A DNA stretch of 64,000 nt from Oikopleura dioica (Eukaryota; Animalia; Chordata), in contig OU015568.1 of the NCBI GenBank assembly GCA_907165135.1, positions 8,060,001-8,124,000 on the forward strand, written 5' to 3'. Each line of letters opens with the position of its first letter. Within the stretch, counting starts at the first letter, position 1. Of the stretch, positions 1,943-36,765 are shown one piece after another. Under the pieces are notes generated by a model. That model was not told the DNA's origin. It made no database searches and saw nothing but the letters and a program-made list of their open reading frames with translations. The translations under genes were made by a program, and so were the position numbers.

Positions 1943-4900
1943 ATGGAGGGGATCGAAATGGACGTAGACTATGAGCGAGACAGGCAGAAAGAAAAAGAGG
2001 AGTATGAAGACGAGAAGAAGCTCCTGCTGACAACGATGACTACCATTGGATTCGACGCAGATGGGAGCTATAAACTCGACCAATACGCCCTAAGTACGCC
2101 CTCTTTTTCCCAACTTCCTTATTATAGCTAATATTTTAAAAAGAGAGTATGAAATGATTTTTATTAAGATTGATAGGTATAAAAATAGTCTAGTCATCAT
2201 AGACATAGGTCGTTAAAATTAAATTTCAGACAGTATCCGAGTAATTATAAAACTCGTTATGAAGCGCGACCCTCACTGCGAAGTGCGTCAAGTAATTGGC
2301 AGCTCGAACATTTGGGAAACCGATTTGATCCCAATTTTAAAGCAGCATTCTGACAGTGAAGACCTCTTCCGATCAGTCATTCGGCTCATGTTCTTACTTT
2401 CTATGCCCACTGCTGAAGTATTCCGACAATACTACGGGAAAGAAGATTTTCCAAAAGACGCAGAGTTTCAGTATAATTACAGAAACGTGGAAGAGACTCT
2501 TTCGAAGTACAAAGAGCTCTTCGACGACGTCGACTTGTGGAAAGCTCTCAAGAGCGAGTTCCAGCGAGTTCTTTCAACTTCTTGGGAGGATCAGTCAAAA
2601 GCGGATTCTGTTTGCGTTGAGAGAATGCTCCATATTATCCGACAAATTCTCCATGTTCCGTCGAACGAAAATGATCAAAATCGAGCTCCTGGAGAGGATA
2701 CTGTCCACGATAAAGTTTGCCGAAGTCTTATAGAATCTGATCTTTCTTCTGTGCTTATCTTGATCGCTTCAAATGACGATTGCGTACAGTACAGACCCCT
2801 TGTCATGGAAATTATCGCGTATATGCTCAGAGAACAGGATCCAAAAGCTCTCGCGCAGGTGATTGTCTTCCTTGATTGCATTTTTTAAAAACGATTAGGA
2901 CAATACGAAAGCAGAAAGAGACGCAATGATGAGTGAGCTCAAAAAAGATGCAGATAAAGAAGCAATGGCCCGACGACTAGCCTCGCAAATGACAAGTTCG
3001 CGTCACTCGCGGTTCGGTGGCACATTCGCCGTCATCAACAATCAGGGAAAGAACATTGTGACAAACAAGCTCTACAAAAATGTTAATGAAGTTTCAAGAG
3101 ACAGAGTCAAGGACAGAACCAAAACGAGAACGAGAAAGTGCAAAGGAGAAGAACTGCATGTTCATAGAACTGCCTCGCGAAAGACGAGAGCGGTTATGCA
3201 GAAATTCTGTGACAGGAAAGATTTTTCAATCGTCTTTTCAAAATATATGAGTATTGAGAAATTCTTGACGTTTCAATTCGAAAATCTTCCGAAAGATTCC
3301 TAGACTACGGTTACAATTCTTGCATGGCATCAGCGCGCCATCAAATTCTCCGCGAAGGCGACACCCTTGAAGAAAACAACGAGGTCTTCTACTTCCACAA
3401 CATGACGGTGTTCATGAACTACGCAATAAACAGGCCAATCTGGAGCCTGTCGCAGAAAATCGGCTTTATTTCTGAGACGCTCTCAATCCCCGCGCTCTCT
3501 TTTATTGAGCGCTCCATGCACAAGTATGACGAGAATATACGCTGCGACAAGCAGAGACAGAATAAATGGACAACGAAACTTAATTTCGCGATTCGAGCTT
3601 TTCAGGTTTGTCTGTCAGCCCCTCCTGAGTCCTTGGGTGGCCCAGAGAATCAATACGGTAGCTTATCGAGTATTTCTAGCAAATTATGAAGACAATTTTG
3701 ACGATGCACAAGTCAAAAGATGAGAGTATGAAGCAATCGGCAAACCAGATCAAAGAACAGATCCTTTATACACCAGAATACAGAGAAATCATTCCAATGC
3801 TCATGAAACAATTCAAGTAAAATTCAAGTGGATTTTGATCGATTGCTTTTAATTTTTGATTAGGCCAAATTTCCAGACGAAAAACTATTTACGAGATCTG
3901 ATCATGGCGCAGCACTGGTTATTAAAGCTCCTCGACGGCAGTAAAGACGTCGTCGTGCGGGCTAAGAAAAAAGGATCAAATCGAAAGCGGGCAAAGAGAG
4001 CAAAGGATAAACCGCAGAAGCCAAAGCCGATTACAGACGAGGCGGAGAAAGATGGAACTTGGAATGATATCGTTGACGATATCAATCTTGCAAGAGTTGG
4101 GGATATTGACGTCGACGAGGTGATGCAATACGGATTGCTGTCAGTAGAAGATGGCTCTATGAAAGGTTAGTTTGATAGCCTTCAACTCTAGCGCTGTAGT
4201 TTCAATTTGTGATTCGTGATATGAATCATATGATTTGTTAATGCTTTGCAGAACGATTTTATATTCGAGTATGCGTTTATTGTCACAGTTTTTTAAATGT
4301 CTCAAGTTCACCCCAAGTTTTGCTTGTGCTATTGATTTCATTTTATAAGAATATCTTTTATCCTCAATCTAACATACTAACCGTAATCAAGGCTAAAGTT
4401 TTCATTTTATCGTTTCTGTAATGAAATGCGGTCTCAAAATGTATTTATATGAAAACTTACAGCTGATGTAGCAGCTGGGCTCTCCCCTATTTTGATGCGC
4501 TTACAGATGCCCTCTAACAGGCATATCAGTCAAAAACAGGCCGCCTAAAATAATAAACAACACTAGGAGAAAGGACATATTTCCTGCCTTGAGCCTTTCG
4601 AGAAATGAAGTTTGATTCTCATATATTCTCAATTAAAATATGATAATTAAGCACTTGGCGCGATTCAACTGGCGCTGCATGGGAGAGAACGCGTGAGAGA
4701 CGTTTCCTCAGCCGAGTTATCGCTTCGATTGCTACGCGCAGCGAAGCACTTGTGGCCTGAGAAGGTTGAATTCGGCGAGTTGGAGAACGAAGTTGAAACG
4801 CTAGAGATTTTATGCAAAGAAAAATTGCCCGACGAGGCGTTTCCTGAAGAACAGGAGAATCAAAGGAATGGGTTTATTTTATTTAGACTTCAAACAGATC

Positions 4901-7556
4901 ATCGTTATTTGCGACGATGTTCTTCATTTCGTGGATGTTGGCTCTAAAAGAAGATTCACAGTATGAAAAGATTAACTAAAATAACTGATGATCCTCCAGC
5001 ATATTTATAATATCTTGCTGAAATAGTCTATATATAATTGTAGTCGCTTCCTGCCCTATGTTTTAAGTATTGATAAGGAAGAAGTGCTTCGAAGCCACTC
5101 AAAAGAGATAAAAATATAATTTTGAAGTTCATTTTGCTCATTAAGATCTAGGCGAAGGCTTTTTATATAACATGGAAGTAATTGATAATTTCAGTCGTTG
5201 ACAAGTGACGGATATCAATAAGTTTGCTGTCAAAAATATCAATTTTCTGAAAAGAACTTACTTTCAAAAATGTGCTTGTTTTCTGACATGATCTTTTTCA
5301 TTCTCTCGACACTCTGTCTAAAGATTCATTTTTAATGATAAACGCTTCCAGTTTCATACCTTCTCTCTTTGATCAAGTTGAGGAGTTTCAAGTGCATTTT
5401 GTGGGTGGAAAGACCAAATGGATGATTGAACGCAGTGATCAAGCTCAAGAAAGCAAAAATGAAAATTTTGAAATGCATTTTTTTTTCTAATTTTTGTCTC
5501 TTTGAAGAGACGGTCGGCTCCTTTTATGTGATTCTAAATACGCTGATTGACCAAAATATGCGGTTACTTATCCTATTCCAACATGCGAATTTATCTTATT
5601 AATAAAATTATCCCATAAAAGTGATGGCGAAGAAATGGGCGAAGAAGCGGGCTACGACTACGAAGAAGTAACGGAGGCAATCATCGATGTTGAAGACATC
5701 ATTGAGGCGTACGCTCACCCAGATGTGCTACATAAGGCTGGCATGCTCCTCAAAGATTACAAAGTAGGGTTTTTGATATTTGCTCAGTCGGCGCGCAGCC
5801 GCATATTTGAGCGCTAATAAACTCCTCGAAATTCCCGCTTTCAAAAAATCTGTTCGTAGATGAACACCGTCGAGGTGAACCATGCAATTTGCAAACTCAT
5901 TCATCGCGTCGTCTACCAACTCCAGCGCCCGTCGATGTGCTTCCAAGCAACGCTTTTCCGCACTTTTCAAAAAATCAATGAAGAGAAAATAGAGCTCAAG
6001 ACGAATCCTGTGTATAAAGAAATTTGGACACTCGGCAAGTTCATTCTGGGGAAGTTCTTTCAAGTCATGCAAGATAACGAAAAACTGCCCATTGAGCTGC
6101 TTTTATGGACGACGCAGCGCGATTGGGAGCCGATCATGAAAGGTATCTAAAACAAATCTAGGAATTTCTTCAAAAGAAAGTATCGCGCGATCGGCGATAT
6201 TTACCTTTAGTGCTCAAATATTCATCTTTCACAGTTTTTAACAATCGTTTAGGTGACTTCGGAGACCATTATGTCAAGCGCTCTGGCATGTGGTCGGAAG
6301 AGATGGACGAAGAACTGCGAAAACTTGCCGAAGAAAATCGACTCATCAACGAAACTCTACCTCCAGATGAACAAGAAGACCTCATGAAGTACATCGAACA
6401 AAGCTTCTCAGACAGCTCCAAGACTTCCAAGCAACTTCGACTCCGCTGCGTCAAACTTGGTCTCATCCAAAGCGCTAACAAAGCCGGCCCCAGATCATCG
6501 GCTGTTTTCTGGACAGAAGATATGGCAGATAGTCTCACAATTCTTTGGCGCGAGTTTGCAGAAGCGCAAGATCCAGTTTCTAAAATTCAGGATAAACTCG
6601 ACCTCACCCGATCTGAAATAATAAATAAACTTCTTGGACTTGAACTGATCAAGGACAAAAGTGAAGTGGCCCGCAAAAAGAGCTCTCGAAAGGCAAAAGA
6701 GTCCTCTGAAGGTGATCTTAATAGGTCTTCAAATAATCGGGCGTTGCTGTACGAAAACATTCCGCAAGAAGATACTGAGGTGATTCTTCGGCGGTGCAGA
6801 TGGAACGACAAGCTAGAAAATGCGTTGAAATGGCTCCGTTCTGAGCTTCAAGACGAGATAAACGATCGTCAAGAATCCGCGCACGAAGATTGGGTAGAAC
6901 GCAGTCTTGTGCCTCAAGATCCGGCTGTGGCAGAATATCTTGAAAGAAGCCATATGAAGTCGCTACTCAAAAGTGGCTTCTTCTTGTGGCCAGACCATGA
7001 GCACATGTATTGGAGAATTGGAGTGGGTTGCTCACTCAATGATTTGGACTTTTACAACTCCTGTTTGAACGACTACGAGCCTGACGAAGCGCAATACGGA
7101 TCAGACATCGAATCAGAGCCTGAACCCGAGCCAGTTCAGGTCGCACAAGCTTTGGAATCTTCTGATGACGAGATCAATTTCTTCAAGAAAAATCTTGCTG
7201 CCACTCCGTCGCCCGATAAGAAAGAGAAACCAAAGAAACCGAAAAAGAAACGTATGAAGATCGCGCAGCGCCCTGAAACATCGGGCTCAGAAAATGAAGA
7301 CGAGAATCCAGGAAGTCAAGAGTCACCAACGAAGAACCTCAAAAACATGAGCCTCGAAGAAGAGCCAAAAGTCGATAGTCCCGCGCCAGTTAGTTCACCA
7401 GTGAAGAGAGCAACTCTAGAATCTTCCGATGAAGAGGACAATGGCCCGAAAGAACCATTTCCAGCTGCGAAGGAGTCACTCAATTCTGATTCTGACGAAG
7501 AGATGGATATCCGACCTCGAAAACGAAGGGCTATTTTGGACTCTGACTCTGATTAG
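1943..7556 (+). CDS. TIMELESS: Timeless (Tim1/Timeout, fork protection complex), multi-exon
   Basis: ORFs 2259-2888, 2926-3689, 3856-4170, 4693-4865, 5635-6150 and 6210-7556 carry Timeless motifs (DLIPIL, VIRLM, CVERMLHIIRQILHVP, SRHSRFGGTF, LLRAAKHLWPE, NHAICKLIHRV) and an acidic C-terminal tail. Confidence 0.93.
4141..4405 (-). CDS. Putative nested small secreted protein in TIMELESS intron 4167-4651
   Basis: TATA-like CATATAAAT ~40 nt upstream. ATG at 4405, MKTLALITV, then a 49-nt GT-AG intron joining the 4141-4341 ORF frame (TQAKLGVNLRHLKNCDNKRILEY...). The 3' end overlaps a TIMELESS exon by ~26 nt. Confidence 0.4.
4883..5132 (-). CDS. Nested small secreted peptide B (56 aa, acidic)
   Basis: MNFKIIFLSLLSGFEALLPYQYLKHRQDIINMLEDHQANIHEMKNIVANNDDLFEV*, built with a 37-nt GC-AG and a 42-nt GT-AG intron. 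TATATAAAA ~30 nt upstream, AATAAA right after the stop; paralogous to peptide A. Confidence 0.65.
5239..5478 (-). CDS. Nested small secreted peptide A (65 aa, basic)
   Basis: MHFKIFIFAFLSLITAFNHPFGLSTHKMHLKLLNLIKERRQSVERMKKIMSENKHIFESKFFSEN*, with one 42-nt GT-AG intron at the same aligned codon and phase as in peptide B. C-terminal end uncertain. Confidence 0.65.
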
Positions 7557-33785: not shown

Positions 33786-36765
33786 ATGATTGAATATTTG
33801 TAAGCTTATAAATAAAACCGAAGAGATGAAAATTTAATTAAGAGGATCAGAAGTAAACGAAAAAGCTCATGGTTTTGGTCTGCAAAAATGCGAAGAATTT
33901 TCGCACTCTGGTTGGTGGAAAGATGGAAGGCCAAATGGGTTCGGCCTAAGAATTTATTCCGACAACACTGTTGATATTGGAGTATGGGAAGATCAGGAAA
34001 GGATTGCCTTCACAATATCTTTATGTTACGAACAAAAAAGTGATCCAAAAAGACTTTGATTCAAACTGCCACAATTTACCCAAAAGGTCTCCAATATCTG
34101 ATGGACAAGAAATACGGTCGTCTCGAGGCATTTGCTCATGCCAAGGTCAACTGTCAGAAGATGATCAGGAAATTTGACTTGGAAGAGCCCGTTTATACAG
34201 ATGTCACTTCTAGCAAGAAAGCGTTTTCCTCGATGATGAGAAAAATGAAATCGAGAAGGTCGAAAGTTCACTTTCTCTCAGGCAGATTTTGATAAATCAA
34301 AGATATAAGTGTTAGTATTAGTACAGGAACAGGTGCTTGTCCCGATGTGCAAACTTTTCTCATATGAAATGTCAAAATCGTGTGCAGCTTGAGACAGTAT
34401 TTGCGGACGCAGGATTGTGTATCGAAACCGTTGGGGAAGGCAAGGAAACGGCAACAGGACTTTGATATATCACAGGATCAGCATATCTTGAATCTATCTG
34501 AGGAGTCTTCTATTCATAGTTCCTTTTGGAATGAAGGTAAATTGTCATTATTCGAATTTATTTCTTATAAAAAAAATTAGTTCGATCTCTTGATAAAACT
34601 GGTGGAAACACATTCGATGCACTTCGTTTAGTCAAATCCTTTCCACCAGGTCCTCTCACAAAAAAGGGGTGTAGGGCGCCCAGGTTCACAATTGTGAACC
34701 CGGTTCACAATTTTGTGAACCCGGTTCACAATCTGTGTGAACCCGGTTCACAAAATTTTTAAAAGTATGAAATCAGGGGTCTGTATGCGCTCCGCGCCTG
34801 ATTTCTTAGAGAAACTCATTTTTGACGTTATGAGCTTTCTTTACAACCGCGCCTTCAGTCAATTTCAGTCACTTTTTTTGACCGAAATTGTGAACCAGGT
34901 TCACAAAATTGTGAACCGGGTTCACAAAATTGTGAACCAACCGATTGTGAACCTGGGCGCCCGCCACCCCAAAAAAGATAAGCAGTGCTCTAGACCTGAT
35001 TTCCTCCAAAAACTTTCCAGAGTTCTATCAGGTATCAGACAAAATATAAAAAACAATCAGCATTGTTTTCAGCTACTAAGGCAAGGCCTCAACCCAAATT
35101 CACGAGATCTGCTCGGATATTCCCTTCTTCACGCATCTGTTTTCACAAACAGTGCTCGCACTATTCAAATGCTATTGACTGCTGGTGCCATCTCACAGGA
35201 AGCGTTATGTCAACTCAACGGATAAAGAATACTGTAACATTGTCAGTATAAGTTTGTTGTATCAACAAGCATCGACCAAACGCATAACAGACATGCTTGG
35301 ATTTCACGCCATTGCACTTGGCAGTTTTCCTTCATTACCAGTCGCGGTTGGCGCATTTGATCAAGTTTCTGCCTGTTGAAAGCTCAGAAAAAGGAGATAT
35401 GGATAGACAAGACTCTGAAATTGACTCTGCTTACGGATCGCACGAAACAAGTCGCATCACGAGCTCGAGATACACGAAGAGACCGCGGTCATCTAAGTTC
35501 TCATCTATTCAAAGTACGCCAAGAAAACTTAATCGACCAAGAAGTACTCCGTCGCGATTTTCCCTCGTCAGAGAGCGTCCGTGTCGCCCTGCCGAGAGCT
35601 TTAAAAACATCATCAGTTTATTTCTCCGCGTTGGAATAATCGAGAAGCAGGCATCTAATGAAATTCCTCCTCTTCTATTCTACCCCGTGCTCGCAAAAGA
35701 TGAAGAAATCACCCGCGCGATGCTGCTATCCGGTGCCGAGACGTCGGATTGTTTTCTTCAGGACGGAATACTGCTGGAAGCAATAACGTTATCGCCAGAA
35801 ACGACGGCGGATATAACTGCCATGTTGGTTTATTCACGCGCCGTTGCTAGTAGACCTGCTCGTCTGTCAACACCGCCGGACAGGGTCAACAAGAAAGTTC
35901 GGCTGAATTTATCGCAGAAGATTACGCCCGAGTTTAGCAGTGCTTTGTTTAGATGTGCTAAGGGCGGACACATCGACCAGTGTATAAGCCTGATTCTAAG
36001 TGGATCTGATATCAACGAAGAGTTCAACGGAAACTCTGTTCTGGGGGTCGCCATTTTGAACGGCCATTATGAACTTGTTGTTGAGCTGATTAAACTCGGT
36101 GCAGATCCATCTTCAACCGAATCAAACGGAGGAAACCCTGTTGGTCTTGTTCTCCACCCATCGACAGATCATCTATTCACCATCACTCAAAAGATAGAGC
36201 TGGTAAATCTTCTGGTAGAATCAGGAGCCAAGGTCTATTCAAAATGCAAACTGCGACAAAAATCAACAAGTTTCATCAATACCATCGACTTCATTGATAA
36301 ATCCTATCATCCGAAATATGGAAATCCGCCATTGAGAGGTGGCTTCTTCTCCGAACTCACTCAAGACGAGAAAAGAAATTACTTGGCAAGGGGAGAGTTT
36401 CAGTCTTATCTTCTGTCGATTCTCAAAGAACAACTGACTGAATTGGCTCATGCAAAAGATCCTAAAGGTAGAAAATTAGTTGAAGATAGTGAAATTATTA
36501 GATAATTCTAGCTCTCTCTGCTTGTTTTGAATGTGGAACCGCGAGTAAGAAGCTTGTCCCTGATTCTCATTTCAAAGTCATCGCCTTTTGCGGGTATGAA
36601 AATTTCTAGTTATCAAATATTCATCCTTTTAGGTCAAAATGCAGAAAGCTGTTTTGGCGATCGAACCCGAGCAGGACAAAAATCATCAGTAGAAAGCGAA
36701 AAGTTTTCAACTTCGAGCCATTTTTCCTGCAAAGTAATCTTATCGACAACTATTCCTACAATTGA
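33786..36765 (+). CDS. ANKMY1: MORN + ankyrin + (degenerate) MYND protein
   Basis: MORN-like GWWKDGRPNGFGLRIY; ankyrins (GYSLLHASV, FTPLHLAVFLHY, SVLGVAILNGH); ANKMY1-like FSELTQDEKRNYLAR; spliced tail ACFECG...AFCGSKCRKLFW. One coding exon is interrupted by a MITE. Confidence 0.8.
34666..34970. mobile_element. 305-bp MITE with subterminal palindromic repeats, inserted in an ANKMY1 exon
   Basis: TIR GGGGTGTAGGGCGCCCAGGTTCACAAT / ATTGTGAACCTGGGCGCCCGCCACCCC (2 mismatches); AAAAAA duplicated at 34660-65 and 34971-76; repeated TGTGAACC(C/G)GGTTCACA units near both ends. Confidence 0.88.

What the first reader, a model, noticed from the sequence alone, without database searches (positions are those of the whole stretch)
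4866..5621. Two paralogous, oppositely charged secreted peptides hidden antisense in a GA-AG intron of TIMELESS
Seen: the 756-nt intron (GAATGG...AAAAG, joining ENQS-DGEE in frame) holds two minus-strand mini-genes that the ORF track misses. A is 65 aa (5239-5478) and B is 56 aa (4883-5132). Both start with a M-x-F-K-I signal peptide. They align without gaps over 34 aa (THKMHLKLLNLIKERRQSVERMKKIMSENKHIFE vs YLKHRQDIINMLEDHQANIHEMKNIVANNDDLFE) and share a phase-2 intron at the same codon. B has its own TATA box and AATAAA. The mature A peptide is about net +5 and B about net -4, with amphipathic hydrophobic spacing. Inference: an undescribed peptide pair, such as a heterodimeric coiled coil, a cationic antimicrobial/lytic peptide with an anionic neutraliser, or gamete/house peptides.
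Basis: partly seen in the sequence, partly recalled or inferred. Interest (0 to 1): 0.75.

Follow-up and report, generated by a model that had tools for sequence, protein, structure and literature searches.

The report
Two tiny paralogous genes inside TIMELESS intron
A 756-base intron of the TIMELESS gene of the plankton tunicate Oikopleura dioica (Okinawa strain) holds, on the opposite strand, two unannotated neighbouring mini-genes that look like real duplicates coding for small secreted helical proteins of opposite charge. Whether they are expressed and what they do is untested.

Summary

On the minus strand, gene A (5478-5239, 65 aa, one 42-nt GT-AG intron) and gene B (5132-4883, 56 aa, a 37-nt GC-AG and a 42-nt GT-AG intron) translate as described.

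- **Relatedness:** the 34-aa core scores 49, against -21 +/- 13 for shuffles. An unbiased six-frame self-comparison of the intron gives p about 0.003 for the best match and 0.0003 for two collinear matches.
- **Coding signature:** A and B are identical at 40/84/38 % of codon positions 1/2/3, and the proposed frame scores best and has no stops. This argues against neutral non-coding duplicates.
- **Charges:** mature A is +5 and mature B is -4, with identical hydrophobic positions.
- **Uniqueness:** the genome has no other copy, there is no Pfam match, no relative turned up among 1.84 billion proteins, and A was not found among the database proteins, which include this strain's annotated TIMELESS.

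The intron ends also form a 14/16 inverted repeat. Earlier scan notes on other DNA of this genome report similar nested peptide genes and stem-clamped non-GT introns.

The parts
1943..7553 (+). Host gene: TIMELESS (OKI2018_I69 PAR g10673, CAG5084555.1). It has 10 exons and 9 introns, of which 7 are GT-AG and 2 are GA-AG.
   Evidence: The window's 448-aa open frame is 100 % identical to P0001, whose 90 %-identity cluster contains P0006 = CAG5084555.1. P0006 maps exactly onto the window's + strand. Pfam TIMELESS E 5.9e-47.
4866..5621 (+). Host intron 7: 756 nt, GA-AG, phase 2. It joins ...ENQ-S(AG|T)-DGEE.
   Evidence: Mapping the deposited protein gives exactly this junction. A canonical GG|GT donor at 4871|4872 would also stay in frame, but the deposited model does not use it.
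4868..4883 (+). 5' arm of the terminal inverted repeat of the host intron. It begins 2 nt inside the 5' splice site. Its reverse complement carries gene B's two AATAAA signals.
   Evidence: the repeat finder pair I2: 16 nt, 88 % complementary. A match of 14/16 between the first and last 25 nt has p = 0.0003 against Markov-1 simulations. The stem is present in both the MFE and the centroid fold of the pre-mRNA.
5601..5616 (+). 3' arm of the terminal inverted repeat. It ends 5 nt before the 3' splice site.
5521..5528 (-). TATA-like CATAAAAG, 50 nt upstream of gene A's ATG. It aligns with gene B's TATA box.
   Evidence: Sequence and DNA alignment of the two gene units.
5360..5478 (-). Gene A exon 1: 39 codons plus 2 nt. 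It encodes the signal-like N-terminus and the first part of the core.
5318..5359 (-). Gene A intron: 42 nt, GT-AG, phase 2.
5239..5317 (-). Gene A exon 2: 1 nt plus 25 codons plus TGA.
5160..5169 (-). Gene B TATA box (TATATAAAAA), 37 nt upstream of the ATG at 5132. It may also act as a TATAAA-type poly(A) signal for gene A.
   Evidence: Sequence. The poly(A) role is inference.
5055..5132 (-). Gene B exon 1: 26 codons. An in-frame ATG also lies at 5141.
5018..5054 (-). Gene B intron 1: 37 nt, GC-AG, phase 0. This is the weakest element of the model. Read through, it meets a TAG.
   Evidence: No homology support (pre5 segment).
4986..5017 (-). Gene B exon 2: 10 codons plus 2 nt.
   Evidence: Codon position 2 is identical to A in 8 of 10 codons.
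4944..4985 (-). Gene B intron 2: 42 nt, GT-AG, phase 2. It sits in the same codon, and has the same length, as gene A's intron.
4883..4943 (-). Gene B exon 3: 1 nt plus 19 codons plus TAA.
4873..4883 (-). Two overlapping AATAAA hexamers that start at the last base of B's stop codon. Cleavage would fall within or at the edge of the antisense TIMELESS exon.
   Evidence: Sequence.

Best explanation
A and B are a tandem pair of real protein-coding mini-genes that were not found among the database proteins, although that collection includes this strain's annotated TIMELESS. They sit antisense in a long, old, stem-clamped GA-AG intron of TIMELESS in Okinawan Oikopleura dioica.

They arose by local duplication of one small gene that already had a phase-2 intron. 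Each encodes a precursor of about 56-65 aa with a cleavable N-terminal signal peptide. The hydrophilic mature part, about 40-49 aa, has a hydrophobic pattern that has been kept position for position: core positions 3, 4, 6, 7, 14, 17, 20, 21, 27 and 28. This fits a short helix-loop-helix.

The solvent-facing residues have diverged to opposite charge (A +5, B -4). The most likely working model is therefore two small secreted helical proteins with a shared fold and divergent surfaces, which may associate with each other.

Shown here: the anatomy, the paralogy, the coding-type divergence, uniqueness in the genome, and absence from the annotation and from known families. Inferred: transcription, splicing, secretion, fold and any interaction.
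For: - The models translate without stops, and their introns are of ordinary local size. They are 42, 37 and 42 nt, while the host gene itself has introns of 40 and 47 nt. The published median is 49 nt with 11 % non-GT introns (PMC8008620).
- Paralogy: core score 49 against -21 +/- 12.9 for shuffles. The unbiased six-frame self-comparison gives p 0.003 and 0.0003. A single 3-aa indel in the signal region puts the whole proteins in one register.
- Coding signature: over 45 aligned codons, identity is 40 %, 84 % and 38 % at positions 1, 2 and 3. My chi-square on these counts is about 25 with 2 df.
- In all three aligned segments the proposed frame gives the highest BLOSUM score and is the only frame that is stop-free in every segment.
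- Both units keep a TATA-like box at the aligned position upstream. B has AATAAA at its stop codon.
- The mature-part exons have coding-like codon usage: +0.06, +0.13 and +0.23 per codon, against a coding mean of +0.07 and an off-frame mean of -0.07.
- The word search with A's 48-aa open frame found nothing, although the collection includes this strain's annotated TIMELESS, CAG5084555.1. Nested opposite-strand genes are known to be dropped by AUGUSTUS-type pipelines in this species (bioRxiv 10.64898/2025.12.04.692336).
Against: - There is no transcript evidence of any kind.
- B needs a GC-AG intron that only frame-keeping supports.
- The signal-peptide exons have neutral codon usage (-0.05 per codon), and codon usage discriminates weakly in this genome.
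- The region is AT-rich (29-35 % GC). Open frames of 40-60 codons and hydrophobic runs are common there: the same intron has + strand open frames of 51 and 58 aa.
- B's best signal cleavage site has an atypical -3 residue.
- The few differences inferred from a 94 %-identical relative's read-through peptide fall 2:2 on B's codon positions 1 and 3, which shows no constraint.
Confidence: 0.58

Rival explanations
1. The two units are a duplicated stretch of non-coding intron DNA, or a pair of chance look-alikes. The open frames, the 'introns' and the signal-like starts are by-products of AT-rich sequence and of the reader's freedom to place splice sites.
For: - The intron is AT-rich and has many 20-58 aa open frames on both strands.
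- One of the three introns is non-canonical and was chosen only to skip a TAG.
- The codon-usage score is not decisive.
- No relatives, no annotation and no transcripts are available.
Against: - Neutral duplicates should differ evenly at the three codon positions. The observed identity is 40/84/38 %.
- The proposed frame beats the other five in every segment and is the only one that is stop-free in all segments.
- Similarity is significant without assuming any frame or splice site.
- The intron position, phase and length (42 nt) match in the two copies.
Confidence: 0.17
2. These are relics. One functional small gene, most likely A, sits beside a decaying copy, B. Alternatively both are former genes that are no longer expressed, and the coding signature records past selection only.
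For: - B needs a GC-AG intron to avoid an in-frame TAG, and the five residues before that intron do not align with A.
- B's signal cleavage site is atypical.
- B has low GC3 (0.30) in exons 1-2.
- The relative's read-through peptide shows no sign of constraint on B's last nine codons.
Against: - B keeps its start codon, its stop codon and the canonical second intron with a good acceptor.
- B keeps a TATA box and AATAAA signals.
- B exon 3 has the most coding-like codon usage of all the pieces, +0.23 per codon.
- GC-AG and other G-start non-GT introns are common in this species (11 %; PMC8008620).
Confidence: 0.15
3. The intron is a domesticated DNA-transposon insertion, an introner-like element with terminal inverted repeats and a 4-nt AAAG target duplication. 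A and B are its cargo or arose inside it. On this reading the inverted repeat is a transposon scar and was not selected for splicing.
For: - The terminal inverted repeat is 14/16, p 0.0003.
- AAAG occurs at both junctions, so removing the element plus one AAAG copy restores the exon exactly.
Against: - The genome holds no second copy of the 756 nt.
- The arm motif is only about 3-fold enriched over its reversed control. It contains AATAAA, which is enriched anyway, and no other inverted pair lies nearby.
- The arms are unrelated to the MITE at 34649-34990.
- Three other O. dioica-like contigs (78-94 % identical exon) read R-K-G past the same exon end, so the intron and its GA start are old.
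- A 4-nt repeat is weak evidence on its own.
Confidence: 0.1

Closest known systems
Intron-nested opposite-strand genes of Oikopleura dioica, a compact genome with one gene per about 3.7 kb
   Same: A small complete transcription unit lies inside a long intron of a housekeeping gene on the other strand. It is missed by ab initio annotation, as the CORAL preprint describes for this species. Earlier scan notes on other DNA of this genome describe several such nested secreted-peptide genes.
   Different: Here there are two tandem paralogues with opposite net charge.
Cationic alpha-helical antimicrobial peptides with anionic pro-pieces or partners (cecropin or magainin type; recalled from general knowledge)
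   Same: There is a signal peptide followed by a short, Lys/Arg-rich, cysteine-free, predicted helical mature part in A (+5). An anionic relative is encoded next door.
   Different: - There is no sequence similarity to any known family.
- The hydrophobic moment of the core as one helix is not significant.
- The anionic part is a separate paralogous gene. It is not a pro-piece of the same precursor.
- No activity data exist.
Charge-complementary heterodimeric coiled coils (Fos/Jun-like, E/K coils; recalled from general knowledge)
   Same: The hydrophobic positions are identical, and four direct K/R-to-D/E reversals occur at homologous polar positions of A and B.
   Different: Only about two heptads (core positions 14-28) show a/d spacing, and core positions 8-13 are hydrophilic. 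My hand assignment of e/g positions shows no systematic opposite-charge pairs. No multimer model was run, because joined sequences were left out.
Stem-clamped or introner-like non-GT introns (Huff et al. 2016 introners; earlier scan notes s1-393134, s1-378084, s1-336575)
   Same: The host intron starts with GA and has a terminal inverted repeat just inside both splice sites. The other GA-AG intron of the same gene (3216-3295) also has the highest terminal complementarity of the short introns, 9/10.
   Different: It is single-copy, 756 nt long and carries two gene-like units. Introners are multi-copy and usually carry no genes.

Membership tests
TIMELESS (host gene) | Pfam PF04821 Timeless N-terminal domain plus the Timeless C / PAB domain | tested here: met
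   P0006 gives PF04821 at E 5.9e-47 (160.7 bits). PF05029 scores 21.7 bits, just under the 23.8 cut-off.
Secretory proteins with a cleavable signal peptide | Basic n-region, h-region of about 7-15 hydrophobic residues, c-region with small residues at -3 and -1, and a hydrophilic remainder | tested here: inconclusive
   By hand only, since no SignalP-type tool was available. A has K4, a maximum 9-residue hydropathy of 2.9, and the site I-T-A|F, which fits. B has K4, a maximum of 2.4, and the sites F-E-A|L (atypical F at -3) or L-S-G|F. Both are hydrophilic after residue 20.
Cationic alpha-helical antimicrobial peptides | Net positive charge | tested here: met
   A is +5. B is -4, so B fails this feature.
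Cationic alpha-helical antimicrobial peptides | A continuous amphipathic helix with a high hydrophobic moment | tested here: inconclusive
   muH at 100 degrees is 0.26 for A (p 0.29) and 0.27 for B (p 0.09) against shuffles. Values are higher at 105 degrees (0.42 and 0.37), but that angle was picked after the fact.
Cationic alpha-helical antimicrobial peptides | Membrane-lytic or antimicrobial activity | not testable with these tools
   Needs synthetic-peptide assays.
Dimeric coiled coil | An uninterrupted a/d heptad pattern over at least 3-4 heptads | tested here: not met
   Hydrophobic positions 14, 17, 20/21 and 27/28 span about two heptads. Positions 8-13 are hydrophilic, and positions 3, 4, 6 and 7 form a separate short segment.
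Neuropeptide or prohormone precursor | Conserved dibasic cleavage sites flanking the conserved peptide, often with a Gly amidation donor | tested here: not met
   A has K-E-R-R and M-K-K. The aligned positions in B are E-D-H-Q and M-K-N. There is no G-K/R motif.
Introner / MITE-derived intron | Terminal inverted repeats at the intron ends | tested here: met
   14/16, p 0.0003.
Introner / MITE-derived intron | Many similar copies in the genome | tested here: not met
   The 756 nt match only themselves in G000. There are no paired copies of the arm motif elsewhere.
Introner / MITE-derived intron | Target-site duplication, one copy of which is spliced out with the element | tested here: inconclusive
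   AAAG occurs at 4862-4865 and 5618-5621, which gives four equivalent junction placements. Four bases is too short to be significant.
Any described protein family (Pfam, 1.84-billion-protein library, ESM Atlas) | Significant sequence match | tested here: not met
   - Pfam found nothing at E up to 10 for three exon pieces.
- phmmer with A exon 1 gave one hit, P0018, a tandem-repeat artefact with no local alignment.
- The Atlas gave no usable hit.
- Queries were single exons of 25-39 aa, so sensitivity is low.

The most novel reading that the evidence does not exclude
A and B are an obligate pair. After duplication, the polar face of one copy was recharged from + to - while the hydrophobic core was frozen. 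As a result the secreted cationic protein A (lytic, adhesive or signalling) is bound, neutralised or chaperoned by its anionic paralogue B, made from the adjacent gene. This would be a two-gene 'effector plus built-in antidote' or heterodimer module, born and kept inside an intron.
Probability: 0.1. Interest if true: 0.6.

Novelty: new member of a known kind. Interest (0 to 1): 0.33.

Why it matters
If they are transcribed, these are two more protein-coding genes missing from the reference annotation of a model chordate. They would also be a clean case of a lineage-restricted secreted-protein family that duplicated inside an intron and diverged to opposite charge while keeping its hydrophobic skeleton.

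That makes a small, easily synthesised system for asking how new secreted proteins evolve and whether paralogues pair. It also shows that codon-position asymmetry between tandem copies can flag real mini-genes when no homologues exist.

On present evidence it is a well-supported candidate. It is not yet a discovery.

Tried and rejected
1. **Paralogues in the genome.** I searched all four larger exon pieces, a 35-nt degenerate pattern of the shared 5' coding end with up to 3 mismatches, and the whole intron. Only A and B themselves were found.
2. **Word search with A.** A's 48-aa unspliced open frame gave no candidate. B's open frame is under 40 aa and could not be searched.
3. **Pfam on exon pieces.** Nothing found.
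4. **Big HMMER search with A exon 1.** The only hit was a repetitive artefact.
5. **ESM Atlas.** Nothing usable.
6. **Orthologous intron.**
   - The single metagenome scan returned L003, which has only 288 nt upstream of the match.
   - It also returned L004, which reaches only the preceding exon.
7. **A read-through trick.** I searched the host-exon open frame that runs into the intron. It gave three ENA peptides. They show the intron start is conserved, but they are uninformative on selection in B.
8. **Fragment alignment for a profile.** MAFFT misplaced the 10-aa piece, so I did not use it.
9. **Codon-usage log-odds.** Too weak in this genome to decide.
10. **Canonical GG|GT donor at 4871|4872 for the host intron.** In frame, but the deposited model does not use it.
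11. **Relation of the intron arms to the window's MITE at 34649-34990.** None.
12. **Joined (spliced) A and B proteins.** In the script that produced the statistics, the exon pieces were translated separately.

No contig looked human.

Full report
**Where we are.**
- The window is G000:C1:8060001-8124000 of a 64.28-Mb, 19-contig assembly. This matches the published size and scaffold number of the Okinawan Oikopleura dioica assembly OKI2018_I69 (PMC8008620).
- The window's 448-aa open frame 6210-7556 is 100 % identical to P0001. P0001's 90 %-identity cluster contains CAG5084555.1, 'Oidioi.mRNA.OKI2018_I69.PAR.g10673.t1' (P0006, 1262 aa), from a 17.09-Mb record.
- P0006 carries the Pfam TIMELESS domain (E 5.9e-47).
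- Mapping P0006 back onto the + strand reproduces it exactly with 10 exons (1943-7553) and 9 introns of 136, 40, 80, 74, 47, 486, 756, 96 and 110 nt. Seven are GT-AG and two are GA-AG.
- A canonical GG|GT donor six bases further on (4871|4872) would also be in frame, but the deposited model does not use it.
- GA-AG introns are known to be frequent in this species (PMC7072748), and 11 % of introns are non-GT in this assembly.

**The observation.**
- Reading the minus strand and translating exon by exon reproduces both models to the base.
- Gene A: exon 5478-5360, intron 5359-5318 (42 nt, GT-AG, phase 2), exon 5317-5239. Total 65 aa.
- Gene B: exon 5132-5055, intron 5054-5018 (37 nt, GC-AG, phase 0), exon 5017-4986, intron 4985-4944 (42 nt, GT-AG, phase 2), exon 4943-4883. 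Total 56 aa.
- The phase-2 intron interrupts the same aligned codon in both genes, and both copies are 42 nt.
- B has TATATAAA 37 nt before its ATG and two overlapping AATAAA that start at the last base of its stop codon. A has CATAAAAG at the aligned upstream position.
B has a second, non-canonical GC-AG intron that is needed to avoid an in-frame TAG. The five residues before that intron do not align with A (score -2).

**Is the A/B resemblance more than chance?**
Shuffles give -21 +/- 12.9, and none of 100000 reaches 49.
- That register was chosen after the fact, so I also compared the whole intron with itself in all six frames, with no assumption about frames or splice sites.
- The two best same-strand segment pairs are exactly the C-terminal exons (47) and the signal-peptide exons (37).
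- Against 3767 first-order Markov simulations, the top score has p = 0.003. The sum of two collinear pairs (84) has p = 0.0003.
- With one 3-residue indel in the hydrophobic N-terminus, the two proteins align in a single register from F-L-S-L to the shared F-E near the C-terminus.

**Is it coding?**
- Codon usage separates coding from non-coding only weakly here: coding mean +0.07, off-frame mean -0.07, sd about 0.1 per codon.
- The mature-part exons look coding (+0.06, +0.13, +0.23). The signal exons are neutral (-0.05).
- The stronger test is how the two copies differ. Over 45 aligned codons they are identical at 40 %, 84 % and 38 % of codon positions 1, 2 and 3.
- My chi-square on those counts is about 25 with 2 df. 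Neutral divergence of a non-coding duplicate should be even across positions.
- Position 2 sets the hydrophobic or polar class of the residue. Accordingly the hydrophobic positions of the 29-aa core are the same in both proteins: 3, 4, 6, 7, 14, 17, 20, 21, 27 and 28.
- In each of the three aligned segments the proposed frame gives the highest BLOSUM score of the six frames, and it is the only frame that is stop-free in every segment.
- I take this as good evidence that both copies have evolved under selection on the encoded protein. It does not show that they are still expressed.

**Uniqueness and annotation.**
- Neither the exon pieces, nor a degenerate 35-nt pattern of the shared 5' coding end (up to 3 mismatches), nor the whole intron finds anything else in the 64-Mb genome.
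- The word search with A's 48-aa open frame finds nothing, although the same collection includes this strain's annotated TIMELESS. I take it that A is not annotated.
- B's open frame is too short for that tool.
- The CORAL preprint notes that opposite-strand genes are under-represented by AUGUSTUS-type pipelines in this species.
- Pfam is blank.
- phmmer of A exon 1 against 1.84 billion representatives returns only a 1248-aa tandem-repeat protein with no local alignment, which is an artefact.
- The ESM Atlas gives nothing.
- All of these queries were single exons of 25-39 aa, so only close relatives could have been seen.
In the script that produced the statistics, the exon pieces were translated separately.

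**Relatives.**
Neither reaches the orthologous intron.
- As a substitute I searched the host-exon open frame that reads through into the intron. Three ENA peptides (94, 82 and 78 % identical) all continue R-K-G past the exon end instead of S-D-G-E-E.
- The intron and its GA start therefore exist in those lineages too, so the intron is old.
- In the 94 % relative, the read-through tail overlaps the antisense of B's last nine codons. The four inferred base changes fall two on B's third codon positions (silent) and two on first positions (L to M, N to Y).
- That split is what neutrality predicts for the sites this trick can see, so it is uninformative.

**The proteins.**
- Both start with a basic residue at position 4 and a 12-14 residue hydrophobic run. 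The remainder is hydrophilic.
- A has a good -3/-1 cleavage site (I-T-A|F). B's sites are less typical.
- Mature A is +5 (10 K/R, 5 D/E). Mature B is -4 (3 K/R, 7 D/E). Each has 3-4 His and no Cys.
- Four homologous polar positions are direct charge reversals, K or R in A against D or E in B.
- Treated as one helix, the core's hydrophobic moment is not significant (p 0.29 for A, 0.09 for B).
- The 3-4 spacing covers positions 14-28 only. A second short hydrophobic segment lies at 3-7, with a hydrophilic stretch at 8-13. A helix-loop-helix is at least as likely as a coiled coil.
- A's dibasic K-E-R-R is not conserved in B, which argues against a prohormone.

**The host intron has its own feature.**
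- Its ends carry a 16-nt inverted repeat with 14 pairs (4868-4883 and 5601-5616). It lies 2 nt inside the 5' splice site and 5 nt inside the 3' splice site.
- It has p = 0.0003 against simulations and is present in both the MFE and the centroid fold of the pre-mRNA.
- The 5' arm, read on the other strand, is B's double AATAAA.
- AAAG is repeated at both junctions.
- The gene's other GA-AG intron (3216-3295) also has the best terminal complementarity among the short introns (9/10).
- I found this before consulting the scan's notes. Those notes independently describe stem-clamped non-GT introns on other DNA of this genome.
- A transposon origin is possible, but the element is single-copy and unrelated to the MITE elsewhere in the window.

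**Verdict.**
- The reading 'two paralogous secreted-peptide genes' is the best explanation, with about 0.6 probability that both are real, currently coding genes.
- The specific functional ideas are untested, and none is favoured by the data.
- The scan has noted similar intron-nested secreted-peptide genes elsewhere in this genome. This pair is a further member of that kind and has no sequence relatives. Its one unusual feature is charge inversion on a conserved hydrophobic skeleton.

Noticed in passing
window 4868-4883 and 5601-5616 (+), with AAAG at 4862-4865 and 5618-5621: The 756-nt GA-AG host intron is closed by a 14/16 terminal inverted repeat just inside both splice sites (p 0.0003; present in the MFE and centroid folds). 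The 5' arm doubles as gene B's AATAAA signals on the other strand. A 4-nt direct repeat flanks the element.
   Followed up: partly
window 3216-3295 (+): This is the second GA-AG intron of TIMELESS (80 nt, phase 2). It has 9/10 terminal complementarity, starting at the 5' splice site and 5 nt from the 3' splice site. That ties with the 756-nt GA-AG intron for the highest value among this gene's introns.
   Followed up: partly
L004:120-1710 (JGI contig Ga0115100_10761872), against window 6143-6252: In a sister O. dioica lineage (82 % identical TIMELESS), the intron before the last exon is about 1.6 kb. It holds an antisense multi-exon aquaporin-like gene with an NPA motif. In the window that intron is 110 nt, and the closest aquaporin copy (86 %) lies on another contig, G000:C5:9687751-9688240. 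The genes nested in TIMELESS therefore differ between lineages.
   Followed up: partly
window 5227-5261 (-): A perfect GTAAGT lies inside gene A's last codons. A 35-nt GT-AG intron (5261-5227) would replace the last 7 residues with 28 others and run the frame through B's TATA box. This would be a possible alternative 3' end or isoform of A.
   Followed up: no
window 4166-4651 (+ intron), minus-strand ORF 4341-4141: The other long TIMELESS intron (486 nt, GT-AG) holds a 66-aa minus-strand ATG open frame with no signal-like start. It was not examined.
   Followed up: no
P0019, P0020, P0021 (ENA peptides), against window 4693-4944: Three gene calls from other O. dioica-like contigs read R-K-G past the same exon end, so the GA start of this intron is conserved across lineages whose exon is 78-94 % identical.
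   Followed up: partly
P0018 (1248 aa): The only hit of the 1.84-billion-protein search is a tandem-repeat protein. Its 56 bits are summed weak repeat matches with no matched stretch, and BLASTP finds no alignment. This is a false positive to ignore.
   Followed up: yes
window 5133-5238 (-): Only 106 nt separate A's stop from B's ATG, and A has no AATAAA of its own. A may end at B's TATAAA, or the two may be co-transcribed, since O. dioica has operons.
   Followed up: no
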